DNA from: Chrysemys picta bellii | Taxonomy: Eukaryota | Assembly (NCBI RefSeq): GCF_011386835.1 | Contig: NC_088795.1 | Location: 12,276,001-12,340,000, forward strand | Reading direction: 5' to 3' | Length of the DNA: 64,000 bases | Shown: positions 17,794 to 58,326 of the stretch, in pieces | Numbering within the stretch: position 1 is the stretch's first letter | Layout: each line of letters opens with the position of its first letter | The notes under the pieces: generated by a model | The model's input: the letters and a program-made list of their open reading frames with translations, nothing else | Databases searched by the model: none | What the model was told of the DNA's origin: nothing | Translations under genes and position numbers: made by a program

Positions 17794-20700
17794 CTGTAAT
17801 GTACAATATTCACAATGAATTGTCATTTATAAAACTCCCACACGGTATTTATTAACAGGCGGAAATGATTCAGTAGATTTTGGTATATGAAGAACACACA
17901 TTCGATCAAATAAATTCCTGTCTTATGATCTGACACATCATCAGATATATTTCTTTGTTATGATCCGACACTCTTTTTCAGCATATGCAGAATGCGATTG
18001 CTTACCTTCCCACACGTACAAAAGTGCAACCACATTACTCCCATCCTTCAAAAGCATAACTCAGTGCAGTTGTTTAACAGTGTGGACTAAATTCCTTCCT
18101 GGGTTAACGTCACTGAGTTTCATGGAATTACATGGGAATGAATCTGGCCTCATGAATCTATCTTACTAAATGTGATATGAGTATAGCATTATAAGACCCC
18201 TTCACTTATCACAACCTAAAACACTGGATGTAAGGGGATTATGTTTATAACTTTCTCCTCATATGCCCTTGGCCATTCATCTCTCTCTGTGCCAACTATA
18301 CACCTCTCCTGCCATTCTGTGGCACAAATTCTGAGGGAGACTATGGACTTCTCTAGGTTTACAACCTGAGGCAACAGCAGAGTTACCTTCACATCTCTGC
18401 ATTTCCCGCAGGTCAGAGTTTAGTTTTCAATGCATGTCTTGGAGAGGTTTGAATATACAAAAAGGGCAACGAGTGATAATTAATGTTAACTGGAGCAGAT
18501 TCATTCTTATTGATATTTCCCCTCAGATTTGGAAACGGTTCATCATGCAGGAAGGAGACATCTATGGCTCTGCCTCCGTTCTATCCACAACAGAGCTTGG
18601 ATTGCATGGGGATTCCTGGGAGCTATGACAGCAATATGGAAGTCTACCACCAAGGATTTTCTGCTTACAAAGCTCTGCCAGTGGTTACCATTAGTTTCAC
18701 GTTGGGGGCCAGCACATGGAATATCACTGTTGATTGCAGTGGCCCTAGCAGATTTCAGAGAGGAGAGGATTTCTTTAAGAAACATACATGCCCCAAACAA
18801 TTAACAACACTGTCACTATTTGTGTATCTGGTAAAATTCCTATTAGACAGACTTGAGAATGCCGGTCACTGTGCCCACTTAGGGGAAGAAATTAGCCAGA
18901 CCAAATCATATGGTATTATCAAGTGACGTATCTTGGCTGTCCTATGCCTTCTTCTACTAAACCCCAGGAGAAGCGCAAAGATAGCTCATCTCACACTGCT
19001 CAGACACACATTATTCCATTAATATGGATGCCAAAAAGAGTAAAAAGAAAAATGTCTCCCAAATCTCCATTTCTGCTTTTCTTTCATTGCAGATGCAGAA
19101 AAGTCTTGTTCCACCATCTCCTGTTACTTGCTGTTAAACAAAGAGCTGATCACTCATCTGTGCCAGAGACCATAGGAAGAGTTTTCATGCATGGCAAATG
19201 GAGGCCTACAGTCTTTTGGGCAAACTCTGGAGACCTGCCCTTGCATGGGTGTATGTATTTAGGCAAGGACAATTCTTCGGTGGTGCCTAACACTAGATAT
19301 GAAAAATCGTACAATTGTGGGGTACCTGAGAGTAGCCCATCATGCAAATCAAGGAGGTTTGTGAGCATGGGGACCAAGCTTCCTTGTTGTCTTCCAAAAG
19401 CAAGGAGGAGATAATTGGGAAAGCAATGAAGGTAACAATCAGCAAAGGAGACTCTTCCCAGGCCCTGAGCTTGATACCAGCTCTCTTTCTCTTTGCTATC
19501 TTCCCTGCATATCCTGAACCTGTTTCACCCCATGTTTTTCACCCTCCATCCATCTCAGGTCCCTTGGCACACTGTCTCCTCTTAAAATTTTACACTACAA
19601 TTTTCACTATTTCAGTCCCTGCCATCTGCCCTGACACCTCAGGCACATCTATTATTGACCAAATCTGCACCTCAGGTCATTGCTACACTTTTCTTCCTAT
19701 ACCTTCAAACTGTGCCCTCACTGGATTCTTTGTTCTTCTTCCCTATCCATCCTTCATGTATCCACCCTACTGTGAAGGTCACTCCCTCTTCCAGCATATG
19801 CCTGTACTTTATGTGCTCTCCCACAAGAGAAATGAATCATGAATACTACAGTAATTGGCAGCAGGGAGACACCCAGAGTGTGGGAACAGCTTCATTGAAT
19901 CAGTGGACCAGAGGAGGTTACATTGAGAGAATTTAAAAAGCTGTTGCAAAACCCACCTATCTGTTAAAGCTTATCCATAACCAACGTTAAAAACAAACCA
20001 AGAAAAAATGAAACCAAATAAGCTAAAGGAAACAAACAGGCATAGACTCAGAGACTGGAAAGGGTGAATCCCCTACAAAGTATCCTCTGGACATCAGCAT
20101 GCAGATCTAACTGTTCAGCACTGAGGCTCTTTGTTGATGGGGTCCCTGGGGGAAAAAAACCTGGATGGTTGGCTGGCTGAAACACAATTCTAAGTGACAG
20201 GAGATAGACAGAAACGGTGATAAGGGGTCAAAGGGAGGGCAGCAACTTTCCGTACTCAAATTCAGGCTCTAAGGACGAAGAGCCTGGCTGCAGCTGACTC
20301 TGGGTGTTAGCTGGACCATTCTTCTATAATCTCTTAGCTAATAGGTCTGGTGTGACAGCAACACCCCCAATCATTCTTGCCAAGAATCCTATAGGCCTTG
20401 AGGTTACTTAAGGCTACATTTTCCTCCCTTAGCATCTTAGGGATCAATAAATGAAAGGAAATGTACAAACCAGGTATTGTGGAAACAGAAAGGAGATGTT
20501 ATTCTTTCTGGAAATCTGCTCTCATATATTTCAACTTACTGATTATCATTGGCACAAAAAAAATTAATGAGGGAGCAATTCCACTGGTTGTTTAGATGGC
20601 AAAAGTTTATCTTCTTCGAGGATCTCTCTCTCACATAAGTGAATGGATACTTTAGTTAACCTGCTTGCATATTGAGATGCTTATATGAAATGAACCTCTT

Positions 20701-21997
20701 TTATAGTTAATTTATTTTTTCCACCCAAATTGCAGAAGAACCAGATCTCCTCTTAGGAAATTAATGCTATGGGTTCATTGATATAAATAATAGGCTCCAG
20801 ATTGTCTGCATTGATCCATTATTGCTGAGATTTCAGGAGAGAGCACTGAATGCCTCACATTGCCAGAACAATCTAGACTCTGGAAAACAGCCTGAGGTGT
20901 AGATGCTATCCTGAATGGAAGAGCTTTATGCTGGTACTAATCATTCCACGTTACCAAGTGCAGGAATTGATAATGGTGTGGAGTTACTGGAATGTGTAAC
21001 ACAACTCCTCCAAGCATAAGTAATGCCTCAGCTGAGCTGCCGCCGCCACTGATCTCAAATTTCTTGTAAAAAACAAAAGAATTCAGCTATTTTACATCCT
21101 TGCTTGGTATCCTTAAACTTCAAATGAACTGTGAAGAACAAGGTAGCATGTTCCAGTTCCGGGCTAAAACTGCAATACCAGAGATGCAGTGCTGTAGACC
21201 TGCCCTCTTTTCTGGACTGATGGGGAGATCAAAAGGGACAAAGCCACAGAGGAGGAAATGTCCATGAGGCAGCAATTAGAAACTGATGTTATCAGTTTCC
21301 ATTCCCTTAGGGAAAAGAGTCAAGGGAGGGGAAACATAGACCCTGACATTATGGAATCCAGAGCCAAGAAACACAGATGTGTATCTAATAGGGGATCTCT
21401 GAAAAAAGAGCCACCTTTGCAACAGTAAATATGGGTACAGTTCTCATTAAGATTTTAGAAAGGAAGACTTTTATAAAACTGAAAAGCCCTTCCACACCAA
21501 CTTTCACCAAAGAAACTTCCTCTGAGGAGAGGAAATGCCAGCTTGTTTAGAAAAAAATACCTTTCCTTTATGCACATAATCACACAGCCTTTTGAGCTAT
21601 TATATTGCTGGCCAGAGATTCTGCAACATCAAGAGTAGGCTGGAAACTTAATCAGCTTCTTAGGATGAATATTACAGGCTTTCCCTAGAACTTCTGAGGA
21701 AGGATTTGTCCTTAGGCAATCCCTAAAGCCAAAGAACTAGCAGCTGCATTGAAGAATGGGCTTCACATCCACACCAGTTATCACGGGACTTGTATGAACC
21801 TCAGAGTAGGGAGCTTTTCTGTTTATTTTGTGGTTAGGTTAAAATACCATAAATATATTTTTTCTATACCCCATTACCTAAACTTCAAAAATAAACTTGG
21901 AGGAAAAGATTTTGCTGACCACGGCTTTTTGTGTGCTTCTGCTGAATCACTCCACCAGCCTGCAAATAGAGTTAGGGTTGCAGCCTGGTTTCTAGAG

Positions 21998-22327
21998 CAG
22001 CGGTTCTCAAACTGTGGGTCAGGACCCCAAAGGGGGTGGGACTCCATTTTAATGGGGTCACCAGTGCTGGCTCAGACTTGATGGGGTCTGGGGGCGGGGC
22101 CAAAGCCCGAGCCCCACCGCCCAGCACCAAAGCCAAAGCCCAAGGGCTTCAGCCCTGGGTGGTGGGGGTCAGGTTACAGGCCCCCTGCCTGGAGCTGAAG
22201 CCCCTGGGCTTCGGCTTTGGCCCCCCCGCCCGGGATGGTGGGGCTCAGGCTTTGGACCCCTTGGGGTCATGTAATAATTTTTGTTGTCAGAAGCGGGTCG
22301 CAGTGCAATGGAGTTTGAGAACCCCTG
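21998..22327. mobile_element. hAT-Charlie MITE
   Basis: TIRs CAGCGGTTCTCAAAC / GTTTGAGAACCCCTG; TSD TTCTAGAG / TTCATGAG (Charlie NTCTAGAN preference). Confidence 0.85.
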
Positions 22328-23742
22328 TTCATGAGAAGAATACGATTTCCTTTCTGAGGCCAGCATCAACTTTCCTGCCAGAGGGATCAGATAGGAAGGT
22401 GTTGCCATCTGCAGGACAGAAGGACTTCTAGAAACATATCAGTATAGTTGAATCCAGCACAGGAAAAGAGCCCCATAATTGTGATATGTCTGTAAAGAAT
22501 TTGTATCAATTTATCAAAACTTTTAGAATGGGGGATTCCTCATCAGGAATATCTCTGACCTCCGATACAACCTAATCCTGATCAGATAAAGCTAGACAAG
22601 TTCTGTATCTCCTCTCAGCATCTAGAAAGATCCCCCCGTGTCCCCAACTTTTTCAGCTTTAAGACAAGCCTGTAAATCCGTAGAAAATAATTTAATCAGA
22701 TTATTGATGCCATCCAATTTAACGTTCCTCAAAGAGTCATTGTTTGAGGATTTGTATTTATTGTACTCACTGGGTTCTTAAAAAAAAAGGAAAACCTTTT
22801 AAAGTTTCTTTTGAAGGTGTGTGGGTTTGTTTGGGGGTAGATGTCTTATTCTTAGGAGAAACTGAGGGTGACTATTTTTACTTACTTTTCACCTTTGCCC
22901 TTATTGGTGGAGGAGGGATCATTGTTGTCAGAGAAAGAACCACTCAGAAGAAATACAGAATGGGACTTGGTTTAGTGAGATTTAGCAAGGAACAGAGGGC
23001 TCTTCCATCAAGAGGTCATAAATGTTTAAAGTGTGGTTCTACTCTAACGAGTGGCTGCAAAAATGACACTGTGAGATTAGATGCTTATTGCCCTTCACTG
23101 ATTTCAGATACAATTCTTAATTCTTAATTTTATAAGTAAAAATATGCATTTTAAAAAATGTTAGACCTTCAAGCCCTCCGTGAGATCTGAAAGTCAAGCT
23201 TTTCTTCTTTTCTCCTCACTCATCATCATCAATTACCCTGAGCCAAAATGATGAGCATTGGATTCCAGATGCTCCTTAACAACAGGTTATCGAATGCTAA
23301 GTGGGGCATCATTGGTGGGATGGTCTTGGGACATCACACTGTGAGGTTTTTGATTTGTCAGGGAAGTCGGGATCAGAATGAGGGAAGAATTCTGACTAGT
23401 ATCTTACTTTTTAGAAGTCAGATGGTAAGAGGTTTATGAGGGTAGGTTCAAACATTGTATGATGCAAATTATAACTCAATGTAACCAGGAAACATACACG
23501 CTTTAAAAAAAGATTTATCCCATTAGATCATTTCACCACAATTAGTATATCCACTCTCATTTATAGATTAAAACAAGGAAAAGGTATGTAAAAAATGTAT
23601 GCCAAAATGCTAAATTTGAGATTTCAAATTAATAATAGAAAATCCAATGAAGGTTCCCCTAGCAGCTATCTCCTTGCTCTCAGGGATTACAAGAACGTTG
23701 TCCATTATCTGAGCATTGGGTAACTTGACTACAATGCAGTAA

Positions 23743-23915
23743 ATAATACACATAGTATACATAAAAGAACTTCACTTTGTTTTATAACCAAAGATGTGAA
23801 TACTGTTGCAGATTACAAACATGTAAGTATAACAGATGTTTGTAATCTGCAACAGTATTCACATCTTTGGTTATAAAACAAAGTGAAGTTCTTTTGTGTA
23901 TAGTATGTGTATTAT
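23743..23915. repeat. Long inverted repeat (fold-back palindrome)
   Basis: Perfect 60-bp arms at 23763-23822 and 23836-23895 with a 13-nt spacer, extending to 80-bp arms with 2 mismatches. Confidence 0.97.
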
Positions 23916-23987
23916 AGTACGTGTAAACGGAGTGTTTTGAGGAAACCAACAAAACACTTCCCTTGTTTTATCATTTCCCTCTCAACT

Positions 23988-24289
23988 GGGCCCTGATTCA
24001 CCGGGGCTGCGGCTGAGCTGAGGTTGCGGGCACCTCATAAGTACAAAGGTGGCTGTACACTTCTTTTGCACCTCCCAAAGTAGGCTACAGCAGGGGCTGC
24101 TCTAAATGACTCCCCACAGAGCCACCTAGCACTACAGTGTGGCTGAAGTGCAGAGCTCCATTCCACTATGACAGGGGCTGTATAAGTTCTGCTGGCTATA
24201 TGCCTCTAGGGAATCCCCTCCTTCTAAGACTGGGAGCTTTCCACAGAGCCATCACACAGGGGTCACAACACAGGGCAGAATCTAGCCCT
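23988..24289. mobile_element. Old non-autonomous DNA element
   Basis: GGGCCCTGATTC / GAATCTAGCCC terminal inverted motifs like other old palindromic elements here; GC-rich interior. Confidence 0.45.
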
Positions 24290-25149
24290 TTGTGTCTGTA
24301 ATTCAACCATTTTATAAAGACGGATTAAATAGGGATGGAAATCATGCCCACAAAGACAACTTTTGGATCGTCTACAAAGCTCCTATCAAGCCAAATAAGG
24401 GTTAAACTGATAGAAGCATCTTTAATTAATTCATCCTCTAATAAGTCACCCAATTCCCAAGTTACGGCCAGCTTTTGGGTTGGCAAAAGCCCTGTTACAC
24501 ACCTACACATCCATCTTCCTTTCATTCCCGCACTTGTTTTGTTACGGATGCTTTGACTAGAAGAATAGATAATTTAGCCTATAAAAATACAAAGACACCT
24601 CTCTAGAAGTACAATACATTTGACTGGGAGGAAAGCAGCACATTGTATCTTTGCCAGCCAAGAGCATGTTGGGAGTCTCAACATGGGGGTGGGGGGGGGA
24701 AGAGTAGGTTGGAGGCACAAGTTGGGAGCAGATTCTGTGGTTGAGTTTTATGGGGGAGGGAGGAATGTGAGGAGGAGCCAGGGGCTTGATGGTGATCTCC
24801 TTTATCAAGCTATACAACAAAAAAAATGGATTCTATTCAGTGGTTGGGTGAAGCTTTTGGCTGGGTCCGCTGCCTTGTTCCCCTGCTTCATTTCCCCAAT
24901 GTTCATAAATATGAAATCCTACTTCAAAGGAGAGCCAATGAAAAAGCCACTTATATGTCGAATAGTACATTATGCACAGAGACACAGGAGGAAAAGGACC
25001 TATTAATAACAATAGTCAGAAAGTAGAGGCTTCATCCTTGACAAATAAAACAAGCAAATAAAGTCCTACAAAGTATATGCCGGGTGAACATTTAAAGACC
25101 ATATAAGATAATGCTACCCTTTTAGAAGGCAATGTTGGATGACGGTCTA

Positions 25150-43288: not shown

Positions 43289-43527
43289 CACCTCTACCCC
43301 GATAGGACACAACCCAATAGAACATGAATTCGGATATAACCCAATAAAGCAGCGGCTGGAGCACTGGGCCCTTTAAATCACCACTGGGGAAGCCGGTCCA
43401 GTCCAGCACGGTGTACCGGCTCTTGCCGGTACACCGTACCGGACCAAATCCGATATAACGTGGTCTCACCTATAAGGCGGTGAGATTTTTTGGCTCCCGA
43501 GGACTGCGTTATATCGGGGTAGAGGTG
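43289..43527. mobile_element. TA-target (Tc1/mariner-pogo-like) MITE
   Basis: TIRs CACCTCTACCCCGATA / TATCGGGGTAGAGGTG, TA TSD; perfect 13-bp internal hairpin at 43408-43437. Confidence 0.85.
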
Positions 43528-43714
43528 TAGTTCTTCGTTTGTTTGCCTCTTGACTACATTCCTGCAGTATGACAATACAATATTGTCCACAGTATGTAAA
43601 TTAGGGGTATTCAAAAAGGGAAATGACACAAAATGAAACCAAGATATTGGTCATTTTGAACAAGAACAAATTTCATGCTTAATATGCAGACATTTGTTCT
43701 TACTCATCACATAC

Positions 43715-43899
43715 CTACAGCAGCAGCTGCCTTCATCTTATTTCTTACATATGTATGACTGGCTGGGTTGTCTCCTACTAAAATGACAGTGAGATGAGGT
43801 CTCTTGTTCCCAAGGGACATCCATGATTCTACATCCCTCTGGACTTCTTTATAGACTTGTTTAGCAAGCTGAGTCCCTGAGATAATGGTTGCTTCATCA
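43715..43899 (-). CDS. MTHFD2L: MTHFD2L exon 2 (185 nt)
   Basis: tttttatag|T GAT GAA..GCT GTA G|gtatg; DEATIISGTQLAKQVYKEVQRDVESWMSLGNKRPHLTVILVGDNPASHTYVRNKMKAAAAV (YxxxK cyclohydrolase motif). Confidence 0.97.
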
Positions 43900-44324
43900 C
43901 TATAAAAACAAAGATACAAATTCAAGCGTTAAAAACCTACCATCTTAAGTAAAAAATTTCACAATCAAAATACCTAAAATACTCAGATCTCCTGTATTAT
44001 ATATTTACAAATGTTGAGGCCAATGGAGATCGACCTGTTGTTTGAATGATGAATAAATGATAGTATGAAGTTCAAGTGTGGCATGCCAGCTGCTTTCTAA
44101 ACGATAAAGAAGTGGAAGGTCCTGCGTCCAGAGAACCCCCACACATTCCAAAGAGCAGCTCAGACACCTGTGTGGCACTGTTGCCCCAATTTCCTCAGAC
44201 ACACAGCTGGCATCATGTTAATGCCCAGAAGCCCATGGATTGGGGGCAGAGTCTGGGGATAAAGTCCAAGGGAATCCGATTGGAGATATCCGCCCTTAAA
44301 ACCTTCTTGTAGCTCTTCCCCCGC

Positions 44325-44348: not shown

Positions 44349-44516
44349 AAGTAGGGGATACTGCTGCCCCACACTTAGTTCAAGGCTATAATTGTCCTGT
44401 TATTTACAATATAATCCCTTTGATCATATCTAGGTGGTGCCATTTCTTTGCTTTCCCAGGGCCTAGTTGAGATAAGGCGTTTGGTGAGAACAAGCTGATG
44501 GAAGTTCAGTCTAGAT

Positions 44517-44814
44517 CAGGGATCGGCAACCTTTGCTCCGCGGCCCGCCAGGGTAAGCCCCCTGGCGAGCCAGGATGGCTTGTTTACCTGCAGCGTCCAC
44601 AGGTTCAGCCGACCGTGGCTCCCACTGGCCACGGTTCGCCGCTCCAGACGCATGGGACTCCCTCGGCCCGCACCGCTTCCCGCAGCCCCCATTGGCCTGG
44701 AGCAACGAACCGCGGCAGGTAAACCAATCTGCAGACGCGGCAGGTAAACAAACCAGCCCAGCCCGCCAGGGGGCTTACCCTGGCAGGCCACATGCCAAAG
44801 GTTGTCGAACTCTG
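44517..44814. mobile_element. hAT-Charlie MITE
   Basis: TIRs CAGGGATCGGCAACCTTT / AAAGGTTGTCGAACTCTG; TSD GTCTAGAT / ATCTAGAT. Confidence 0.9.
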
Positions 44815-45416
44815 ATCTAGATAAAAGTGGGGATCTTATTTCATAGGGTGAAGCAACTCAAGGAACTGAAATCCGACAGGGGTTGGGAATGCTCTACTTA
44901 CAAGAACAATTAGTTCACCAGTTTCTCCAAATTTATAAAGGTAAACATTGTTGATGCAAGATGAGAAGAATTTTAAAAAATAAAAAATAAAGCTAGGTCA
45001 CAGAGCAGTTGGAGTAGATAATTCTAAAGTCTCTCCTAAACAGGTAAGGCCTTGTCTACACTACAAAGTTTTGTCGACAAAAGTGATGTCAACACTCAAA
45101 AATTGACATAATAAAAATAGGAAAGTCATGTTCACACTCGCTCCCTCTGTCGGCAGAGCACGTCCACAGTGGGGGCACTATCATCGACACGGTGAGCAAT
45201 GCATTGTGGGTACCTATCCTACAGTCCAGCTCAACACTTTCTGTTGCTAGGTGTTGTGGGATGGCAGAGCGGATTGCGGCACATCTTGGGACTGGGCTCA
45301 ATGTCCCATGGTGCATTGCTTTCTGTCCCAGCACTTCATGGGCTTCCAGCTTTCTTTCACAGCATTTTTGCAATGGCCCTTCTTTGCTGTGCACCCTGGC
45401 ATCTTTGTGAGAAGGG

Positions 45417-46804
45417 ATGGATCCCGTCCTGCTCTCCTATGCTCTGTTAACTGCCATGAAGACATCACGGATGACAGTGCAGTTAACTGTGAAGTTCCTA
45501 ACTGAAGAAGACTCACAGACACCTGACATGCTGCGCGATATGGATAAGAGCAACTTTAGATTGCTTTTGGCACTCACAGAACAGCTGCATAGGGTAGACT
45601 GTTGCTTTTTAGCTTGAGAAACAAGCACTGAATGATGGGATCGTAGCGTCATGCAGATGTGGGATCATGAGCAGTGGCTACAGAACTTTCGGATGCGGAA
45701 AGCCACCTTCCTGGAATTGCGTGCAGAGCTTGTCCAAGCGCTTCGGTGCAAAGACACCAGAATGAGAGCTGCCCTATTGGTAGAAAAACATGTGGCAATC
45801 GCTGTGTGGAAGCTACTGGATGGTCGCAAATCAATGTGGAGTGGGGAAGTTGACCATTGGGGCTGCATTAATGCAAATGCATAGGGCAATAAATCACATC
45901 TTGCTATGAAGGACCGTGACTCTGGGAAATGTGTGTGAAATAATGGACAACTTTGCAGAAATGGGTTTCCCTAACTGTGGAGGGGCGATAGATGGCACAC
46001 ATACACCTCTACCTCAATAGAGCGCTGTCCTTGGGAGCCAAAAAGTCTTATCGCGTTATAGGTGAAACCGTGTTATATTGAACTTGCTTTGATCCACCGG
46101 AGTGCCCCCCACCCCTAAGCACTGCTTTACCGCGTTATATCAGGTGGCGTTATATCGAGGTAGCGGTGTATTCCAAATTTGGCACCAGACCACCTTGTGA
46201 TGGAGTACATCAAAAGAAAGGGGTACTTCTCCATGGCACTGCAGGCGCTTGTGGATCACTGTGGGTGTTTCACTGACATCAACACAGGGTGGTCCGGGAA
46301 GGTGCATGATGCACGCATCTTCAGGAACACCAGCCTGTACAGAAAGAAACAAGTGGGGACTTTCTTTCCAAACCAGATTACATTGGGGGTTGTTGAAATG
46401 CCCATAGTGATCCTGGGAGACCTGGCGTACCCCTTACAGCCATGGCTCATGAAACCTTACACAGGACACCTGGACAGCAGTAAGGAGTGGTTCAACAACA
46501 GGTTGAGTAGGTGCCGGATGACAGTTGAATGTGCCTTTGGCAGATTAAAGGCGCACTGGCGATGCCTTTATGGCAGGTAAGACCTCAATGAGGATAATAT
46601 TCCCATGGTCATAGCAGCGTGCTGTCCTTGCATAATCTCTGTGACGCTAAGGGTGAAAGGTTTGCTCAGGGGTGGAATGTTGAGGCAGACCGCTTGGCTG
46701 CTAATTTTGAGCAGCCAGATACCAGGACTATCAGAAGAGCCCAGAGGGGGGCAATTCAGATCAGGGAGGCTTTGAGGCAACACTTTGAAAATGAGAACCA
46801 GTGA
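45417..46804 (+). pseudogene. H1 Harbinger (HARBI1-like) DDE transposase, disrupted
   Basis: MDPVLL..QWLQNFRMRKATF..IDGTH|..NRKGYFSM-like..GKVHDARIF..LGDLAYPL..VECAFGRLK..LHNLC..ENENQ*. Several stops, a deletion near 45817 and a MITE insertion. Confidence 0.95.
46004..46168. mobile_element. TA-target MITE inserted into the H1 transposase
   Basis: CACCTCTACC / GGTAGCGGTG TIRs with TA TSD; same family as 43289; removal restores IDGTHIP. Confidence 0.9.
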
Positions 46805-47061
46805 TGTATATCTCTGTGATTGGTGCTTCAATGTTACATTACACATAGTTTTCCTAGGAAGCAATGTATTTGGGGCCCTACATTCCAATAAGCACATGAT
46901 TAACATGCCTGTGCATGTATTGGTAGTGCCTGCTATCTCAATTTGTAGGAAACAGAGATGAGTTACCATTCAAAAATTTTGCTTTTATTGTACAAGAAAC
47001 AACACACACCAACATACAGAGATGGTTGGTGGGAAAGGAGGTACCAGGGAAGGGCAGATTT

Positions 47062-48685
47062 TCACAGCTGTGTGCAAGTCCAGCTACCATTGTGAAAGTT
47101 GTCCGAGGGGGTGGAGTGAAGGGGAAACCGAGAAGTCCCGGAAAGCAGAAAGGACTGTGTGGGTGGAGTTGGGGGGGGGCATGGAAAAGAGTTCTGAATG
47201 TGCTGCAGGGGAGGGCGGGCTCAGATCTGCTCAGTCTGCAGCATTATTAAGGACTTCAGCATCTGCATTTGCTCCTCCATTACTTTAATCATCCACTTAG
47301 TTGCATCCTTAAACTCCTGATTCTCTTTTCTGTCCTGCTGTTTGGCTTCCCAGCACTCCTTGCATTCCCTTTTCTCTGCATTGGAGCAGTGCAGTACCTC
47401 CTGGAACATGTCTTATTTGCTGTGTCTTGGGCGCTTTCTTATCTGGCAGAGACGCTCCGCCGGGGTGCGTGGGGTGTTCCTGAAGGCCACATCTGCCGAA
47501 GCACAAGGGACAATGCATAGACGTGGGATTGTTAAATTCACACTCATGCATTGAAAAATTTCAGTTAAATACACTTTTTGCGACGTAACAATCACTTTCT
47601 CATTGACCCTTGGCAGGCACAAATCTCTGCGAACACCCAAAGCATGGTGAGTGTTGGTGGGGTTGGGGAAAGCGCTCCACATGGGGAAAAGAGCACACAC
47701 TCTGCAAGGGTTGTGGTGCAACCTACTAGGGAAAAAATTCTAAAATTTTCCCACACTTCTCCACAGACAGGGGTCATTGTAGCAGCTCTCTCACTGCTAA
47801 GGGTAAGCAAGGAAATGAGGGTACATCTATTCCATGCTCGTGGCTTCCACCCTACTCCCTACACTGCTTGCCTATGTTCCGCTTTGGTCCCTGCACAAGT
47901 GATCGCCAAATGGCACGGGAAAGTTTCCTACAATGGGGGAAAGGAACAAAGCTGCTCTGCCACGGAACTTTCGGCAGAGGATTGCCAAGTACCTCCAGGA
48001 AACTTTCCTGGAGATCTCTCTGGAGGATTCCTGTGAGATCACGGCATGCATCAACACTCTATTCCGCCGTAATGATTAGCTACACAGGGAAATGTCCATC
48101 ATCCAGAAACACAGACAGCCTCCCACATTTCTATACCCTGAACCCACCTCTGCACTACACAAATCACAGCCATCTCCTCTCCTGCGTCTTGCTCACCAGA
48201 GAGCAACTGCTGAGACTGGCTAGACACCTCTGGAGTGGAGAACAGTTCTTGGCTGCCTGCCCCACCGGGAGCTCCACATTGTCATCTAACTCCATCTCTT
48301 CATCAATAACTTTGTCCTCTTTCCACCACCTCCAGGCCTGCTGAAGTATCTACAGGGACCTTGGCAGCGGAGGTGGGGTTGCCCCCGAGGATAGCATCCA
48401 GATCCTTATAGAACCGGCAGGTCTTAGGTGAAGCACCGGAGTGACGGTTTGCTTCCCTCACCTTATAGTACGCCTGCCTCAACTCCCTTATCTTCGCTCT
48501 GCACTGCAGTGTTCCTGATCATGGCCCTTTTTTCACAAGCCTCAAGAAATGTGCCCGTAGGTATCCCAATTCCTATGGCTCAAGCGCAGCTGTGACTGCA
48601 CAGCCTCCTCGCCGCATATCCTGATCAGATCCAACAGCTCCACAGTGGTCCAAGCGGGAGAGTGTTTGGTGTGATAACCTGACAT
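47062..48685 (-). pseudogene. H1 Myb/SANT-like (MSANTD/NAIF1-type) gene, spliced, disrupted
   Basis: ATG at 48685 after cttcccag|gtaacc; SPAWTTVELLDLI..GEEAVQSQLR..KIRELRQAY..TCRFYKDLDAILGG. 5'UTR intron 48692-48791, coding intron 47493-48196 (gtgag..cttcggcag), last exon KRPRHSK*DMFQEV..QL*. Confidence 0.9.
47644..48079 (+). pseudogene. Third Harbinger gene in H1: BEN-like domain nested antisense in the Myb intron
   Basis: ATG|gtgagt (47644-47652), 120-nt intron ending ..cttctccacag (47766), exon 47767-48079 = TGVIVAALSLLRVSKEMRVHLFHARGFHPTPYTACLCSALVPAQVIAKWHGKVSYNGG/RNKAALPRNFRQRIAKYLQETFLEISLEDSCEITACINTLFRRND*. One extra A at ~47941. 43/90 aa identical to the H2 counterpart. Confidence 0.75.
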
Positions 48686-51600
48686 GGTTACCTGGGAAGA
48701 TGCGATGAGACCTCTCCATGCTGAGCCAGCAGGAAATAGAATTTCAAAAATCCCTGGGGCTTCTAAGGGGGAGGGACAGATGGTTGTTTACCTGGCTGCA
48801 GGACAGTGGAGTTCAAGCTGATGACCAAAGTAGTCACGATGGGCATTGTGGGACACCTCCTGGAGGCCAATTAAAGTGATGAAATCAAGCATGGTGTCTA
48901 CACTGGCACTTTGTCAAGAAAAATTTAGAGAAAAAAGACATACGTCTCTCGTTGGGGTGGTTGTATTTGGTCTCCAAAACCGGGCATTTTTCCCGACAAA
49001 AGTCGCATCGCAGTGTGTATGCATTCACTGTTTTGGTGACAAAAGGCAGTTTTTGATCGACAAAACTTAGTAGCGTAGACAAGGCCTAAGACTCAGAGGC
49101 AGAGTAAGTGGGTTCTAAACACTGTATTGTTAGTAGCCAGCATGCTATATATTGTTAGAGATACAGACCGAAGAAACGTTGAGGATTTTTGTACCATTTC
49201 ACAGCTTCACTCTCCCTCTTTCACACATCCAACAACTAGAAGTCAGACAACTTCTATAACTATGAATAACATTTTAAAAAATAAAATCTCTCTCTCTTAG
49301 AAGGGGGTTAGCACTTTCAAAGCTGAAGTAAAGTATTACAGTTCATAAAGACAGCAACTCTCCAACCTTTAAAGCTCAATCCCGTACATTTTACGTAGCC
49401 AAAACTCTCACTGATTTCAAAAGGTGCATGAGGAAAATGGGATCTGCATTTTATAAGCAGGAGCAACATTAAAAACTTGTCCATCATGCCATTCAGTTGT
49501 CCCCGATTGTAATAGAAATGCTTCATTTTATATACAATATTGCCTGTCCTACAATTACCTTGTAGTAAATTAGTCATCAAAATTGTCAGATCACGAAGCT
49601 GAGGTTATAGATAATATTAGCAATTCTAGAGAGGTCAGTCCCACATTGTTTAAGTATCTAGTCATCTTAGTTTGTTCTTTTCCTTATTTAGGGTCTTTCT
49701 TCTACAGTGTTTCACATTTGGGCCAGCTGGTTACAGGTTACGTTATCCAGATCAGGCACATGTTAATCTTTTATGTTTATATTCCAGCCTATTGCTTTTT
49801 CACAGAAAAGCTAAAGTGTGTGACTTTCAGATATTAGACGATTCATTTTTGCTGTGCCAGGCAATGCAACCCTTAAATATATAAAGCAATAAAATTGTTA
49901 ATCAACGAGAAAACTTGACTCATTTATCTGGTTTGGAACAAGATGTTCTGCATGACCCAATCAATCCAAGACCACCTTTATATGTAAAAATGAAACAAAA
50001 TCTGAAATTATAACCTCTATTTTTGCTTAAGTTGCATCAGGCCAGGTCTGCCTTCCTAGCAAAATATCAAACTGTCCCCTCCTTACACCAATCTCTTCTT
50101 ACAACCCTACTTTATTATTTCAGAAATCTGTGCACCCTCTTTAATATTAATGTGGGCTGGTGTCCAAATGGACCTCAGAACGAAAATTAACTGTGGTCTC
50201 CCCAGACAGATACAGGGGGCCAAACTAATCCACCAAATACAGAACTGCAGGGAAACACAACCCATATTTGTTTCTAACTAAAGAATCTTTCACTCTTGTC
50301 AGGTTGCCACTGTAAAATTACTGTAGCTCTGGGGAAAAAAAGAGCATAGACTCTTGGAACCACTTTCAACCAAGAATTCCAAAATTCGACTTCCCACATC
50401 TCTGGGCAACAGAAATTATAGGAACTTTCATTCTCAAACTCTCTAAAATCTGCCACTATTCACTCCCCTTTATATATATATAGTCTTTAAGTAGTAAGTA
50501 CATGTTGAACTGTACTTGAAAATAGGAGCATGGACTATGGAGTACAGCTTAATAGGCAGCCTGCTCGAAGCACCGCTAAGCAAGTGAGCAGTTGAATTCC
50601 TCACTAGCTGCAGTTTTTGAGTAAACTAACTTTTTCCTCTCGGTCCTATTATAACTACCTTTAACCTTAACTGCCACTCTTATGCTGCTGATACTTAACT
50701 GAACTTGTATTTCAGCTGCTTCTTTACCAACTGCTTTCTGTTGGCTTTCTTGTCTCAAAGCGAGTTTGCAGCTCTCTCTCAACATCCCTCAGTTAACTGT
50801 CTGAAAATGGAAGTCATTCACTTGGACAAGGGCATCCTCAGGAGCAATTCCATCTTCTCCATCCAGATCTCCCATTTGACTCTCCTGTCTGTACCCACTC
50901 GGTTTTCCTTGACTGTGTTTTCCAGTCTCATCTGTCTGATATATGTAAATGTGCATATTAGCTCTGCGCCAACACTGCCTGCATACAATATAACCCTGGT
51001 TGGACTACCCCTCCTCTGAAGTTGTGTGTTTATCTCCTCGCATATTTCAACTCCTTGTCTTTTCACACATTCCAAGGAAAATCAAGGAAGCCAAGCATGA
51101 TAAATATATATATTTAATATTGTTTCTAGACAGGAATATTATATCTTTCTATATTAAATTATGTCTATTATGTCTGACTGCATTTGTATAGAGAACGTAA
51201 ATCTTACTTTCAGAGGATTAAATAAGATATGTATGAAGTACCAGTGGACATGTCTACTCTTCCTGCGAAACACAGAACTGCACAGTGGAGGATACCAGTG
51301 TTCTAGTCTTACACACAGCATCAAAAGAACTGCTGGTGGTCCACATATCCATGACACAAGGATCAGAATCCTATAGGAAGCTTGCTCCCACTTTTCTAGA
51401 TAGGAAGCAGGACTATGAGCAAGACACCCTCCCACTCACACATCTTGCTTTCTTCTTCTGAAAGAGAACTATAGTTTTGTGTCTATACATACGCACATGC
51501 ACACACTATGCAAGGGACCAAGCCCTGCTTTGAACCGAGTTCAATTTAGAATAAGTGAATTATATTGAGTAACAAGAATAACTTTGTTTAGAAAGTATTT

Positions 51601-53420: not shown

Positions 53421-54091
53421 TGCCACTGCAGATTCCCACGATATGGGGAAAGTAGAAATGTTAAAAAATATTAAATTTTGTATAGATGAAAAGGTTTCAG
53501 CCCTTTTTCTTGTGAAGATAAACTTTAAAATGCAAATCAATGTAAAGTAATCATTAGGCCTTTTGGGAATGGAGCATTAAAGGGTATTTTCACACTTCGT
53601 ATGTAAAAAGAGCCTGTTAAGTTGTGGGTATCACCTCCCTTCAAAAACAAACCTAATCTTGTTAAACCTTCCCAAAACCCTTAGGCCTTGGCTACACTTG
53701 TGAGTTACAGCGCTGTAAAGGCTCCCCCAGCGCTGTAACGCACTCCCCATCCACACTGGCAAGGCATTTGCAGCGCTCTATCTCCGTGGTTGCAGCGCTG
53801 CATGTACTCCACCTCCCCGAGAGGAATAGCGAGTATTGCGCTGCCGCTGCAGCGCTGCGGTGCCAGTATGGCCACCCAATGCGCTGTGAATGGCCTCCAG
53901 AATTATTCGACAGTATCCCACAACGCCTGTTCTAGCCACTCTGGTCATCAGTTCAAACTCTACTGCCCTGGCCTCAGGTAACCAACCATGTGACCCACCC
54001 TTTACATTCCCGGGGAATTTTAAAAATCCCCTTCCTGTTTGCTCAGCCCGGCATGGCGTGGAGTGCTATCAGCGAATCTTTCCAGGTGACC

Positions 54092-55650
54092 ATGCCTCCA
54101 CGCGCCAAGCGAGCCCCAGCATGGAGCAATGGCGAGTTGCTGGACCTCATCAGTGTTTGGGGGGGAGGAAGCTGTATAGTCCCAGCTGCGCTCCAGCCGT
54201 AGGAATTACGATACCTTCGGGAAGGTATCAAAGGACATGATGGAAAGGGGCCATGACCGGGACGCCCTGCAGTGCAGGATTAAAGTGAAGGAGCTCTGGA
54301 GTGCCTACCGCAAAGCCTGCGATGCAAACGGCCGCTCGGGTGCTCCCCCTGCGACCTGCCGATTCTACAAAGAGCTGGATGCGATACTTGGGGTTAACCC
54401 CACCTCCACTCCGAGTACCACCATGGACGCTTCAGAGCCTGGGGGGGAGGAAAGGAGAAGGAGGAGGAGGAAAATGGGAGTGATGGTGGTGGGCCGGATG
54501 GAGACACCCTGGAATCCCTGGAGCCAATGCAGCCAGGAGCTCTTCTCGAGCCAGGAGGAAAGTAGCCAATCGCAGCAGCCAGTACTTGGTGGAGGACAAA
54601 CAGAAGAGCAGGTTCCCGGTAAGCAGGGGTTTTTTTCGGGAAGGAAATTTTCGGTGCGGGCTCTTTGGGAGAGGAGGGTTAGGCATACCTAGATGCGGAA
54701 TAATGCATTGATGTGGTTTATCACATTGCGGTAATCGGCCTCGGTAATCTCCTTGAATGTCTCATCCAGAACGTGAGCAATGCACTTGCGCAGGTTTATC
54801 GGGAGAGCCACCGTAGTCCTTGTCCCAGCCAGGCTAACGTGTCTGCGCCACTGTGCCGTGAGGGGCAGGGGGACCATTGCTGCACACAGGCAAGCTACAT
54901 ATGGGCCAGGGTGGAAGCTGCATTGCAGTAGAAGACCCTCCCTTGCTTCCCAGGTCACCCTCAGCTATTATGCTGTTGTGTAGACCCTGTGTGTTTTCTA
55001 CTCCTTAAGTGTGGGGGGAATCATTACTCTGTCTGGTATAAACAATGCTGCCTCTGTTAAATGTTGCATTTTGCCTATACAGCTGCATCAACCTTGAGAC
55101 CTCAGCCATCCCTCTTATCGCCTGCTCAGAGACTGCAAAGACTCAGGAAGAGACCGCGAAAAAGCAAATAAGACATGCTGCAAGAAGTGATGCGGCAATC
55201 TATTAAAGAGAATGAGAAAGCACAGAACTGGAGGGAGAGAGAAAGCAGGATCCGCCAGGAAAACGCAGCGCACCGGCGGCAAAGCACTGCGCACCGGCAG
55301 CAAAGCACTGATAGGCTCATAAGCATCCTGGAGCGCCAAGCAGACGCTATCCAGGAGCTGGTAGCCATGCAGAAAGAGGAGCAGAACCGCAAACGCAAAC
55401 GCCACCCACCCCACAGCCCTTGTCCCAAAACTCTTTCCGTTGTGCCCCACTGTCACCTCCAACCCACTTTCCCCAACTTCTGTGTTCTTCACGCCACCCG
55501 CTGCCTCCAACACCAGTATCTTCACCACCCAGCCCTGAAAACCACGACCCTTACCCTCTGCACTCAACCCCCATCACCATGCAGTATAGCTGTCCTGAAG
55601 TGCAGCACTCACTGCACAGCACACCAGACAGGACATACGCGAATCTGTGA
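54092..55650 (+). pseudogene. H2 Myb/SANT-like gene, spliced, lightly disrupted
   Basis: MPPRAKRAPAWSNGELLDLISVWG/EEAV*SQLRSSRRNY..QCRIKVKEL..TCRFYKELDAILG. 5'UTR intron 53978-54085, coding intron 54619-55082 (gtaag..ctatacag), last exon KRPRKSK*DMLQEV..TYANL*. +1 G at ~54160. Confidence 0.92.
54689..54964 (-). CDS. Third Harbinger gene in H2: BEN-like exon nested antisense in the Myb intron
   Basis: Uninterrupted frame LRVTWEAREGLLLQCSFHPGPYVACLCAAMVPLPLTAQWRRHVSLAGTRTTVALPINLRKCIAHVLDETFKEITEADYRNVINHINALFRI*, gaplessly homologous to H1 47797-48067. No ATG or clear acceptor is retained upstream. Confidence 0.75.
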   Translation of the reverse strand: MRVTWEAREGLLLQCSFHPGPYVACLCAAMVPLPLTAQWRRHVSLAGTRTTVALPINLRKCIAHVLDETFKEITEADYRNVINHINALFRI

Positions 55651-55687
55651 TTGTACCGTTCCCCACTCCACCCCCTTGTTTCTTTTC

Positions 55688-55725
55688 AATAAATGGATTC
55701 TTTGACTTTGAAAACATTCTTTATT
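55688..55725. terminator. Back-to-back polyadenylation signals between the convergent H2 genes
   Basis: AATAAA (+) at 55688-55693 after the Myb stop, and AATAAA (-) at 55720-55725 after the transposase stop. Confidence 0.65.
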
Positions 55726-55847
55726 ATTGCATAAAGTAAAAGACTCCTTAGCCCAGGAAATAAACAGGCACTGCAAGTCTGCTTAGCAAACACCGATTCC
55801 TAAAGATTGGAACTACTGCACTTCACTCCCGTGCACGGCACCAGATA

Positions 55848-57100
55848 TCACTGTTGGTTTTCAGCCTCAAATCGCTCCCTCGAGGCATCCCTAATCCTTG
55901 CAGCCCCGCGCTGGGCCCCTGTAATACCCCTGCTCTCTGACTGTGCAAATTCAGCCTCCAGGTGTTGAACCTCAGAGGTCCATGCCTGAGTGAAGCTTTC
56001 ACCCTTCCCTTCACAAATATTATGGAGGGCACAGCATGTGGATATAACCACGGGGATGCTGTTTTCGGCCAAGTCCAGCTTCCCATACGGAGATCGCCAG
56101 CGGGCCTTTAAATGGCCAAAGGCACTCTCCACAGTCATTCGGCACCGGCTCAGCCTGTAGTTGAACCGTTCCTTGCTGCTGTCAAGGCTCCTGTGTAGGG
56201 TTTCATGAGCCACGGCATTAACGGGTAAGCGGGATCTCCAAGGATCACAATGGGCATTTCAACTTCCCCAACTGTGATCTTCCGCTCTGGGAAAAAAGTC
56301 CCGGCCTGCATCTTCCTGAACAGCCAAGTGTTCTGAAAGATGTGTGCATCATGCACCTTTCCAGGCCAGCCTGTGTACATGTCAATGAAACGCCCACGGT
56401 GATCCACAAGCGCCTGGAAAACCATAGAGAAATACCCCTTCCGATTAACGTACTCGGATCCTAGGTGGGGTGGTGCCAGAATAGGAATGTGCGTCCCATC
56501 TATCGCCCCTCCACAGTTAGGGAACCCCATTTGTGCAAAGCCATCCACTATTTCCTGCACGTTACCCAGAGTCACGGTTCTTCTGAGTAGGATGCGATTA
56601 ATGGCCTTGCAAACTTGTATCAACACGATTCCAACCGTCGACTTTCCCACTCCAAACTGGTTTGCGACCGACCAGTAGCTATCTGGAGTTGCCAGCTTCC
56701 AGATTGCAATAGCCACCCGCTTCTCCACTGGCAGGGCAGCTCTCAATCTCGTGTCCTTGCGCCGCAGGGTAGGGGCAAGCTCCTCACACAGTCCCATGAA
56801 AGTGGCTTTTCTCATCCAAAAGTTCTGCAGCCACTGCTCGTCATCCCAGACTTCCATGACGATGCGATCCCACCCCTCGGTGCTTGTTTCCTGAGCCCAA
56901 AAGCAACATTCCACGGTGCTGAGCATGTCCGTGAATGCCACAAGCAATTTCGTGTCGTATGCGTTATGCGGCTCGATAGCATCGTCAGACTCCTCACCCT
57001 CACTCTCACTGTCACTTTGGATCTTAAGGAATAGTTCGACAACCAAACGTGACGTGCTGGCGAGACTCGTCAGCATACGCCTCAGCAGTTCGGACTCCAT
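55848..57100 (-). pseudogene. H2 Harbinger DDE transposase, one frameshift
   Basis: MESELL..WLQNFWMRKATF..IDGTHIP..NRKGYFSM..GKVHDAHIF..LGDPAYPL..KPYT(G)/SLDSSKERFN..VESAFGHLKARW..LHNIC..ENQQ*. About 417 aa if a 1-nt deletion at ~56190 is repaired. Acceptor ..ctgtgcag at 57120 precedes the ATG. Confidence 0.95.
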
Positions 57101-58326
57101 TTCCCGCAGACAGATCGCGCTGCACAGAAACGGTTGAAAGATGGTGCCAAAGGTGGACGGAAACAAAGGGATTTCTGGGATGCGAAGCGATGCATCACGG
57201 GGCATTGGGACAGGACCCAGAATCCCCCTTCCCACGCCCCCTTCCCACAACCCACGGCGCCAGAATGGGAAAAGGTGCTCTGTGGGATAGCTGCCCATAA
57301 TGCACCGCTCCCAATAGCGCTGCAATTGCCGCAAATGTGGCCACGACCGTGCGCTGGGCAGCTGTCAGTGTGGACAGACTGCAGCGCTTTCCCTACTCAG
57401 CTGCACGCAGTCAGGTTTAACTCACAGCGCTGTACATCTGCGAGTGTAGCCAAGGCCTTGGGCTGGTCCCTTTGTGAATGCATACATTTTGGAGGGGTAG
57501 GAAAATAAATAGTTTGCCAGTCTACCCAAAATTGCTAAAGCTGGATGGGTCTGCTTAAACTCAGCAACCAAAACAAAAAGACACATGGACATGTGTAGAA
57601 AACAAACAAAAGCATGCACTAAAGCAGTCTTGCACATTTTTTAAGGAAATGTAACAACCCATACACCGAATCTTCTCTCTCACCTTTACCAAGCTGGTAA
57701 GGCTAATATAGAATATATTGTGGTCAGGCATGTAAAATAAGTCCTAAGTGAGCTGACAAGCCAAATTTTTCAGGCTGCGTTAAATACATAGAGAACATAT
57801 TCCATCGTAGAGGTTATTCAAGTGTTCTGAATTTTTAACCCCCAAATGTAATTGCAGAAAGCCCCTTAATCAGGTTTGAAAAAAAAGAAATAAAAGGATT
57901 ACTAGAAAACCAGTGTCTTATTGGGGTATAAAGAGCATTATATGCTATGATGATTATTTACATGTAGGGGATTAAATTTTAAAATGATCGAAAATTCCTG
58001 TTTGTCCCCAAATTGGTTTTTCCATGTATTCTTTAATTTATAAATTTAAATTATTTTAAGGATGCGGAAATTATTTTATTAGCAGTTACAGAGATGAAAC
58101 GGATCTTTATCAGAAAACATATGTGACTTTTGTAAATTTCACTTTGTAAGGTAGGTAACAGTGAGCTAATAACAATATTTTATTTAAAACATTATTTGTA
58201 CCAAGGAAAATGCAAGTGAACTATAACCCTACACATGGCTCACTTTTAAGTACTTCTCACTGAGTACTTCTGCAGAAACAGATGGTAGCTATTTGATATG
58301 CATCTCTATTTTAAAGGAAACTCTCA

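What the first reader, a model, noticed from the sequence alone, without database searches (positions are those of the whole stretch)
47617..48079. Hidden third gene in a Harbinger transposon: BEN-like protein nested antisense in the Myb/SANT intron (element H1)
SEEN: inside the 704-nt coding intron (47493-48196) of the minus-strand Myb gene, the plus strand carries a complete mini gene structure. It has an acceptor (ctttctcattgacccttggcag, 47616), a 30-nt micro-exon ending in a lone ATG, a consensus donor GTGAGT (47647), a 120-nt intron with a pyrimidine tract and CAG (47766), and an exon giving a ~105-aa protein once one extra A at ~47941 is removed. The C-terminal half is absent from the ORF track because of that frameshift. 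ESTABLISHED: Harbinger/PIF elements are described as two-gene systems (DDE transposase + Myb/SANT DNA-binding protein). BEN domains (BANP, BEND3/5/6/7, NAC1) follow the pattern helix..S(L).G....K..LD......I...(V/L)...F......(W/D)..I...I(N/D)..(C/L)R. INFERENCE: VSYNGGRNKAALPRNFRQRIAKYLQETFLEISLEDSCEITACINTLFR fits that pattern, so these elements would encode a second, BEN-type DNA-binding protein. I am not aware of this architecture being described, but I could not check the literature.
Basis: partly seen in the sequence, partly recalled or inferred. Interest (0 to 1): 0.95.

Follow-up and report, generated by a model that had tools for sequence, protein, structure and literature searches.

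The report
Third BEN-fold gene in turtle Harbinger
A turtle Harbinger DNA transposon carries, besides its transposase and Myb-like genes, a small conserved spliced gene for a protein with the fold of a BEN DNA-binding domain, lying backwards inside the Myb gene's intron; the copy in this window is dead, and the exon also acts as a terminal-exon trap in host gene models.

Summary
The one-base frameshift near 47940 is private to this copy: the second Harbinger in the window (H2) and copies in Chelonia read straight through.

The exon is really coding. Only this frame is open in five copies. dN/dS between lineages is 0.24-0.37. The exon is 57-69% identical where the intron interior is 27-46%. ATG|GTGAGT is invariant in four lineages.

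Unresolved: no RNA junction was seen. Some gene models, including a RefSeq locus in Malaclemys, join the exon to the transposase N-terminus instead. So it may be an independent gene or an alternative 3' exon of the transposase unit.

RefSeq isoforms of PFKFB4, TEDC1, CDK6 and RAB3C end in this exon.

The scan met the same architecture before at two other places in this genome (s1-312471, s1-314109), and those follow-ups agreed. I found no paper describing it.

The parts
45045..45047 (.). Left target-site duplication, TAA
   Evidence: the same TAA follows the right end. A 3-bp TWA duplication is typical of PIF/Harbinger.
45048..45083 (+). Left terminal inverted repeat (GGCCTTGTCTAC...)
   Evidence: I1: 36 nt, 89% complementary to the right end.
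45417..46804 (+). Harbinger transposase gene, decayed: frameshifts, and a high-copy insert of about 168 nt at 46002-46169
   Evidence: DDE_Tnp_4, E 5.5e-24 on ORF 46179-46577; ORFs; about 70% nt identity to H2; insert inferred from joints 45977/46001 to 46169/46170 and the depth spike.
47221..47492 (-). Myb-like gene, exon 2 (coiled-coil C-terminal part)
   Evidence: ORF 47221-47409; acceptor cggcag| read; spliced contig joint 47492 to 48167.
47493..48196 (-). Intron of the Myb-like gene, which hosts the nested gene. The donor may be at 48167 rather than 48196.
   Evidence: table 5: joint skipping 674 nt in runs X1 and X3.
47617..47646 (+). Micro-exon ending in the proposed start codon ATG (47644-47646); Kozak-like A at -3 and G at +4
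   Evidence: Homologous acceptor + about 29-34 nt + ATG|GTGAGT in L004, L001, L002 and L010. ATGGTGAGT is invariant in alignment A4.
47647..47766 (+). 120-nt intron of the nested gene (GTGAGT ... cttctccacag)
   Evidence: Intron interior is 27-46% identical between lineages against 57-69% for the exon. Homologous introns are 118-131 nt. The C. mydas gene model P0001 uses exactly this structure.
47767..48079 (+). Terminal coding exon for the BEN-fold domain; one-base insertion at about 47940/47941 breaks the frame in this copy; stop TAG at 48077-48079
   Evidence: (table 4); fold.
48197..48685 (-). Myb-like gene, exon 1 (Myb/SANT-like DNA-binding part), decayed
   Evidence: ORFs 48303-48482 and 48542-48685. 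tblastn to the Myb_DNA-bind_4 gene of L002, E 2e-9 and 1e-12. The fragments themselves give no Pfam hit.
48988..49067 (.). Three subterminal copies of the palindromic motif TTTTGTCGACAAAAGT (a fourth lies at 45069-45084)
   Evidence: family D1. Candidate binding sites; which protein binds them was not tested.
49051..49086 (-). Right terminal inverted repeat, followed by TAA (49087-49089)
54689..54964 (-). Homologous BEN exon of the second, diverged Harbinger (H2). The frame is intact, but a deletion of about 200 nt has removed the micro-exon, the intron and the first 9 codons.
   Evidence: compared with L001 and L002.

Best explanation
H1 (45048-49086, TAA target-site duplication) is a dead copy of a turtle PIF/Harbinger transposon whose family encodes three proteins, not two. 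The third is a protein of about 100 aa that consists of one BEN-fold domain. It is encoded on the transposase strand, downstream of the transposase, by a terminal exon (47767-48079) that lies antisense inside the intron of the convergent Myb-like gene.

In four of five turtle lineages the start codon is the last three bases of a tiny upstream exon (ATG|GTGAGT) and is joined to the main exon by removal of a 118-131-nt intron. In the fifth lineage the ATG lies at codon 3 of the main exon. The micro-exon has its own conserved acceptor, and its length varies out of step with the reading frame (29, 30, 34 nt). So the part before the ATG is most likely 5'-UTR, and the transcript starts further upstream, plausibly at or near the transposase promoter (one transcription unit, alternative splicing).

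Shown: the coding constraint, the conserved splice signals and the BEN fold. Inferred from what solved BEN domains do: the protein binds DNA sequence-specifically and acts on the element itself, for example at the subterminal palindromes, as a cofactor or a regulator of transposition. Because the exon has a strong acceptor and is terminal, copies that land in host introns appear in RefSeq models as alternative last exons of host genes.
Against: No contig in four presumed RNA runs showed the 47646 to 47767 joint among the 15 joints listed (55 were not shown), and contigs cross the acceptor unspliced. Those runs are stored as contigs, so a rare isoform could be missed. No member reaches Pfam's BEN gathering score, and the profile finds no solved BEN chain by sequence. 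Several gene models join the exon to the transposase N-terminus instead of the micro-exon: P0003, P0020, P0022, and RefSeq P0028/P0126. One lineage lacks the ATG|GT donor. No conserved polyadenylation signal follows the stop; AATAAA or ATTAAA is present in L003, L007 and L009 only. DNA binding and any role in transposition are untested.
Confidence: 0.68

Rival explanations
1. The exon is not a gene of its own. It is an alternative 3'-terminal coding exon of the transposase gene. A donor inside the transposase coding sequence (…IVLQ|VWD…, CAG|GTRTGG) or further upstream is spliced in frame to the BEN exon. The product is the transposase N-terminal 40-135 residues fused to a BEN domain, a truncated product that could regulate transposition.
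For: RefSeq Malaclemys LOC128825970 isoforms X1 and X2 use donor CAG|GTATGG at L009:8367/8368 and acceptor aaccag|GTGAGC at 9521/9522. C. mydas models P0003, P0020 and P0022 also start with the transposase N-terminus. All junctions are phase 0. In H1, base 45657 is A, but other family copies have G, which restores CAG|GTGTGG at the same site (table 3). Both genes are on the same strand and the micro-exon has an upstream acceptor.
Against: The donor site also encodes the conserved transposase residues Q-V-W, so its conservation says nothing about splicing. The three C. mydas models use three different donors. The RefSeq locus is an internally deleted copy. Every lineage keeps a start codon dedicated to the exon: ATG|GTGAGT in four, ATG at codon 3 in the fifth. 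That is unnecessary for a fusion product. Micro-exon lengths of 29, 30 and 34 nt do not preserve a frame with an upstream coding exon. The two readings can coexist.
Confidence: 0.22
2. The exon is a passenger. A host exon of the Pat-type BEN family was captured by a turtle Harbinger lineage and is carried along without any function for the element. Its splice signals are leftovers of the host gene.
For: Related domains sit at the C-terminus of many non-transposon proteins in fish and frogs. The sturgeon and zebrafish loci have no Harbinger genes within 8 kb. The top named structural relative is a host protein, Xenopus Pat.
Against: Between Harbinger lineages that differ by about 30% in their transposase DNA the exon shows dN/dS 0.24-0.37, an open frame and invariant ATG|GTGAGT. 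Meanwhile the surrounding intron has drifted to near-random identity. That means selection acted while the element was propagating. Capture may still be the origin of the gene; this rival concerns only lack of function.
Confidence: 0.07
3. There is no gene. The ORF and its signals are chance, or the conservation belongs to the opposite (Myb) strand, for example an alternative Myb exon.
For: The antisense frame -2 shows almost the same amino-acid identity (38-53%) on the same alignment. Both H1 and H2 have short antisense ORFs.
Against: Frame -2 has 1-2 stops in every copy and the other frames have up to 9; only +1 has none. The near-equal identity is the expected artefact of sharing third positions. 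A very confident fold (pLDDT 95.7) and 100 homologues are incompatible with chance.
Confidence: 0.02

Closest known systems
Canonical PIF/Harbinger elements (two genes: DDE transposase + Myb/SANT-like protein), as surveyed in PMC4482050 and PMC9179366
   Same: DDE_Tnp_4 transposase, Myb/SANT-like second gene, short TIRs and a 3-bp TAA target-site duplication; about 4 kb long; the two genes are convergent.
   Different: Carries an additional conserved coding unit for a BEN-fold protein, nested antisense in the Myb intron. The surveys describe two ORFs only.
BEN domains with solved structures: BEND3 BEN4 and BEN3 (7v9i, 7w27, 7v9h), BANP (7yug, 8yzt), BEND6 (7yul), NACC1 (8yzs)
   Different: Sequence identity is 6-14%. 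No member passes Pfam's gathering score (best 20.8 against 23.2 bits). The protein is a single stand-alone domain of about 100 aa encoded by a transposon, not a multi-domain chromatin factor. DNA binding is not shown.
Xenopus laevis Protein Pat (Xpat, UniProt O73622), a germ-plasm and primordial-germ-cell protein
   Same: Its C-terminal residues 186-280 superpose on the model with TM 0.89, rmsd 1.1 A, 25% identity, E 3.6e-7. That is far closer than any named BEN protein. The fish and frog relatives found by the profile likewise carry the domain at the C-terminus.
   Different: Pat is a 293-aa host protein with no known link to a transposon. The relation rests on two predicted structures, and I did not recover Pat by sequence search. 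The direction of any transfer is unknown.
Transposons that make two products from one transcription unit by alternative splicing (maize En/Spm TnpA and TnpD; Drosophila P element transposase and repressor), from my own knowledge, not tested here
   Same: If the BEN exon is reached from the transposase promoter, the element would choose between transposase and a small DNA-binding protein by splicing, as those elements do.
   Different: A different superfamily. Here the second product's exon lies inside the intron of a third, convergent gene. The shared promoter is only inferred.

Membership tests
PIF/Harbinger DNA transposon | DDE transposase of the DDE_Tnp_4 type | tested here: met
   PF13359, E 5.5e-24, 85 bits on ORF 46179-46577.
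PIF/Harbinger DNA transposon | Second gene encoding a Myb/SANT-like DNA-binding protein | tested here: met
   H1's decayed fragments give no Pfam hit on their own. They do align (E 2e-9 and 1e-12) to the gene in L002 that carries PF13837 Myb_DNA-bind_4.
PIF/Harbinger DNA transposon | Terminal inverted repeats and a 3-bp TWA target-site duplication | tested here: met
   36-nt TIRs, 89% complementary, with TAA on both sides.
BEN domain (Pfam PF10523) | Sequence score above Pfam's gathering threshold | tested here: not met
   No hit for the H1 pieces or for P0001. 16 of 57 family members hit BEN at E<=1, best 0.0026. P0036 scores 20.8 bits against a cutoff of 23.2.
BEN domain (fold) | The BEN fold, as seen in solved BEN-DNA complexes | tested here: met
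BEN domain (function) | Sequence-specific DNA binding | not testable with these tools
   Inferred from the fold only. Candidate sites are the subterminal palindromes.
Pat-type C-terminal domain (Xenopus Pat and fish/frog relatives) | Close structural and detectable sequence similarity to the Pat C-terminal domain | tested here: inconclusive
   TM 0.89, rmsd 1.1 A, 25% identity between two predicted structures. The profile reaches fish and frog proteins at E 1e-4 to 1e-9. Pat itself was not recovered by sequence.
Independent protein-coding gene | Own start codon, open frame under purifying selection, splice signals | tested here: met
Independent protein-coding gene | A processed transcript with the predicted junction; own promoter | tested here: inconclusive
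   The junction was not among the joints listed from four contig-level runs. Gene models disagree on the upstream exon.

The most novel reading that the evidence does not exclude
The BEN-only protein is a germline-directed regulator or cofactor of Harbinger transposition. It belongs to a vertebrate-wide 'Pat-type' BEN subfamily exchanged between transposons and host genes. On this reading the frog germ-plasm protein Xpat, and the many fish and frog proteins that end in this domain, trace back to exon capture of such a transposon gene through its strong terminal-exon acceptor. The turtle RefSeq chimeras (PFKFB4, TEDC1, CDK6, RAB3C) would then show that process under way.
Probability: 0.15. Interest if true: 0.8.

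Novelty: new variant of a known kind. Interest (0 to 1): 0.6.

Why it matters
Harbinger elements are treated as strict two-gene systems, and their domesticated descendants (HARBI1/NAIF1, the MSANTD genes, plant ALP1/HDP) are read in that light. A conserved third gene for a BEN-fold protein would add a new player to Harbinger biology, possibly a regulator of transposition. It would also give BEN domains a transposon reservoir in vertebrates. It offers a concrete mechanism, a ready-made terminal exon with a strong acceptor, by which host proteins could acquire C-terminal BEN domains. The close structural match to Xenopus Pat, a germ-plasm protein for which I know of no assigned domain (my own knowledge), gives a testable lead on that protein. 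For genome annotation it explains a set of 'hypothetical proteins' and odd isoforms in turtle gene sets.

Tried and rejected
- Pfam on the two H1 pieces and the 152-aa ORF: no hit at E<=10.
- Pfam per member and a PDB profile search with the shallow alignment A2: only chance hits, such as IgE constant domains at E 0.04.
- PDB profile search with the deep alignment A3: TFIIA gamma at E 0.02. I judge it spurious because the fold does not agree.
- AlphaFold with 9 sequences: pLDDT 48, unusable. It was replaced by the 57-sequence run.
- Read laying on four presumed RNA runs: the predicted 47646-to-47767 joint is not among the 15 joints listed. The runs are contig-level, so this is not evidence of absence.
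- Logan proteins P0016 and P0018 (102 aa) looked as if they might be spliced cDNAs. Their contigs are unspliced, and the called 'M' is an internal GTG.
- ESM Atlas feature search: scores of 0.85 to bacterial clusters, noise.
- Search from the fish member P0061 to reach Xenopus Pat by sequence: only close fish relatives were found.
- Sturgeon and zebrafish loci: no Harbinger genes within 8 kb, so I do not claim the non-turtle relatives are transposon-borne.
- Opposite-strand coding was rejected because of stops.
- The weak similarity between the transposase motif LQNFRMRKATF and the BEN motif LPRNFRQRIAKY (D2) has E 4.3 and is treated as chance.

Full report
OBSERVATION

- an acceptor ending at 47616;
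- a 30-nt micro-exon whose last three bases are ATG (47644-47646);
- GTGAGT at 47647;
- a 120-nt intron ending ...cttctccacag at 47766;
- an exon from 47767 to the TAG at 48077-48079, with the frame broken near 47940/47941.

ELEMENT

H1 spans 45048-49086. It has 36-nt terminal inverted repeats and TAA on both sides. Its genes are:
- a DDE_Tnp_4 transposase on the plus strand, broken by frameshifts and by a high-copy insert of about 168 nt at 46002-46169;
- a convergent Myb-like gene on the minus strand, whose intron holds the finding.

Four copies of a palindromic motif, TTTTGTCGACAAAAGT, sit in the subterminal regions.

IS THE EXON CODING?

A second Harbinger in the window (H2, about 53900-57340, opposite orientation) is about 70% identical to H1 in the transposase and Myb exon 1. 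It is not alignable by blastn across the intron. Yet tblastn with the two H1 halves finds one continuous ORF in H2 (54689-54964, minus strand), with 48-49% identity and E 5e-11 and 9e-7. That ORF spans the exact point where H1 needs one base removed. Contigs of other H1-family copies lack one base at 47940 (table 4), so the frameshift is private to this copy.

Using X/NNN at the break, I compared five copies:
- Only the proposed frame is free of stops in all of them; the other five frames have 1-9 stops each.
- dN/dS between lineages is 0.24-0.37, with a third-position excess (for example 28/23/47).
- Two copies of one family give 0.81, as expected for dead copies drifting after insertion.
- H1 against L002 is 57% identical in the exon, 28% in the intron interior and 6/6 in the donor. 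Against the closer L004 the figures are 69% and 46%.

GENE STRUCTURE IN OTHER COPIES

The profile search found 100 relatives at E<=1e-3. I fetched the DNA behind eight of them.

Four lineages have the same layout: acceptor, 29-34 nt, ATG|GTGAGT, a 118-131-nt intron...ttccacag|, then the exon. They are H1, L004 (a Logan contig), L001/L002 (C. mydas, H2 family) and L010 (C. mydas, 'DVIIMEDIS' type). ATGGTGAGT is invariant in the alignment. In L004 the intron holds an in-frame TAG, so the ATG can reach the exon only by splicing. The C. mydas gene model P0001 is exactly lone ATG + 131-nt intron + exon.

A fifth lineage (L009, L011, 'VTMNDITLL' type) lacks the GT donor after the homologous ATG, but it has a conserved ATG at codon 3 of the exon. 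So every lineage gives the exon its own start codon.

The micro-exon lengths (29, 30, 30, 34 nt) do not keep a reading frame. I read the bases before the ATG as 5'-UTR. The conserved upstream acceptor then implies a still earlier exon.

In all six turtle loci tested for context (L001, L002, L004, L009, L010, L011), the transposase lies upstream on the same strand and/or the Myb exon lies downstream on the opposite strand. The window's own H2 has lost the micro-exon, the intron and nine codons through a deletion (against 17).

WHAT IS THE TRANSCRIPT?

This is the weak point. My one read-laying run, on four presumed RNA runs stored as contigs, showed the Myb-intron joint but not the 47646-to-47767 joint among the 15 joints listed. 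Contigs also cross the acceptor unspliced. Two Logan 'proteins' that looked like spliced cDNAs turned out to be unspliced.

Gene models disagree upstream:
- P0003, P0020 and P0022 (C. mydas) start with the transposase N-terminus.
- The RefSeq locus LOC128825970 of Malaclemys (isoforms X1 and X2) does the same. In Malaclemys the donor is CAG|GTATGG inside the transposase coding sequence (…IVLQ|VWD…) and the acceptor is the conserved one.
- The same site reads CAG|GTGTGG in other H1-family copies (table 3), but it also encodes conserved residues, so its conservation is not informative.

I therefore keep 'alternative 3' exon of the transposase unit, giving an N-terminal-transposase-BEN fusion' as a live rival that may coexist with the BEN-only product. 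That RefSeq isoforms rest on transcript evidence is my assumption, not something I checked.

THE ACCEPTOR IS USED IN HOST GENE MODELS

Several RefSeq isoforms of host genes end in this exon:
- PFKFB4 X4 (Trachemys) and X3 (Chrysemys);
- TEDC1 X5 and RAB3C X3 (Chrysemys);
- CDK6 X2 (Malaclemys);
- a GlyT1-like protein (Mauremys);
- a KDM4B-like protein (Gekko).

The exon thus appears as a terminal-exon trap when a copy sits in a host intron.

FOLD

- Sequence methods alone do not call BEN. There is no Pfam hit for H1 or P0001 and no solved BEN chain by profile.
- Pfam BEN is nevertheless the only recurrent weak hit: 16 of 57 members against 2 or fewer for any other family. One relative scores 20.8 bits against a cutoff of 23.2, and UniRef names one fish member 'BEN domain-containing protein'.
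- With the 57-sequence alignment, AlphaFold gives pLDDT 95.7 and pTM 0.86: five helices and a short hairpin. The 9-sequence run had given pLDDT 48.
- Foldseek finds TM above 0.5 only for BEN domains.
- The AlphaFold cluster library adds many 'BEN domain-containing' entries at TM 0.6-0.74.

I file the protein as BEN by fold. It is not a member of Pfam's family by score.

WIDER FAMILY

The nearest named protein is Xenopus laevis Pat, a germ-plasm protein. Its residues 186-280 match with TM 0.89, rmsd 1.1 A and 25% identity. More distant profile hits are fish and frog proteins that carry the domain at their C-terminus behind unrelated N-terminal parts (SAP/SPRY, KRAB zinc fingers, HSR, ATF7IP_BD). 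The sturgeon and zebrafish loci I fetched have no Harbinger genes within 8 kb. A gecko-type contig shows an acceptor 12 nt before its own ATG but no Myb exon. So I claim residence in a Harbinger element only for turtles. Whether the element captured a host exon or the hosts captured a transposon exon is open.

MECHANISM

- Shown: a conserved coding exon under purifying selection, with conserved splice signals and a BEN fold.
- Inferred: the exon is translated from its own ATG into a BEN-only protein of about 100 aa. It is transcribed from upstream, probably with the transposase. It binds DNA, as solved BEN domains do. It acts on the element, with the subterminal palindromes as candidate sites, as a cofactor or a regulator.

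NOVELTY

Surveys of 214 PIF/Harbinger families and of teleost Harbingers describe two ORFs only. No paper in the library links Harbinger with BEN. Repbase and Dfam could not be checked.

The scan itself has met the same architecture at two other places in this genome (s1-312471, s1-314109), with follow-ups reaching the same reading. One of those notes calls the genome a painted turtle.

This report adds:
- the tests of coding constraint;
- the lineage survey of the start codon;
- the rival based on the transposase-BEN gene models;
- the host-gene chimeras;
- the match to Pat.

Noticed in passing
window 46002-46169: A short, very high-copy repeat (about 168 nt) is inserted in the H1 transposase. 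Contig depth jumps to 6,000-25,000 there, other copies join 45977/46001 directly to 46169/46170, and a similar 85-nt stretch lies at 43445-43529. It is probably a SINE or MITE. It explains the gap between the two transposase ORFs.
   Followed up: partly
window 43707-43925 (minus strand): ORF reading ...GNKRPHLTVILVGDNPASHTYVRNKMKAAAAVG, which from memory looks like an exon of a methylenetetrahydrofolate dehydrogenase (MTHFD2 or MTHFD2L). If so, H1 sits in or near that host gene, antisense to it. Not tested.
   Followed up: no
window 44510-44821: A stretch of about 310 nt that matches its own reverse complement at 69% identity. It is a large imperfect palindrome just upstream of H1. All the overlapping ORFs are Pro/Gly/Arg-rich on both strands.
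   Followed up: no
window 45069-45084, 48988-49003, 49031-49046, 49052-49067: Palindromic subterminal motif TTTTGTCGACAAAAGT, one copy in the left TIR and three near the right end. These are candidate binding sites for the Myb-like or the BEN protein.
   Followed up: no
window 53900-57340 (H2): The second Harbinger has a long transposase ORF (56150-57334, 394 aa) followed by a frameshifted C-terminal part (55848-56213), and a Myb gene on the plus strand. It is also a dead copy.
   Followed up: partly
L009:6001-9833 (Malaclemys CM051176), and proteins P0019, P0023, P0024, P0025, P0034 and P0113: RefSeq isoforms of host genes (PFKFB4, TEDC1, CDK6, RAB3C, GlyT1-like, KDM4B-like) end in the Harbinger BEN exon. 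In these models the normal C-terminus is replaced by a BEN domain.
   Followed up: partly
window 45677-45712 against 47959-47994: A 36-nt stretch, 72% identical, links the transposase N-terminal motif (LQNFRMRKATF) and the BEN motif (LPRNFRQRIAKY). At the protein level E is 4.3, so it is probably chance.
   Followed up: no
UniProt O73622 (Xenopus laevis Pat), residues 186-280: The C-terminal domain of this germ-plasm protein is predicted to have the same BEN-type fold as the transposon protein (TM 0.89). I found no paper that assigns it a domain.
   Followed up: partly
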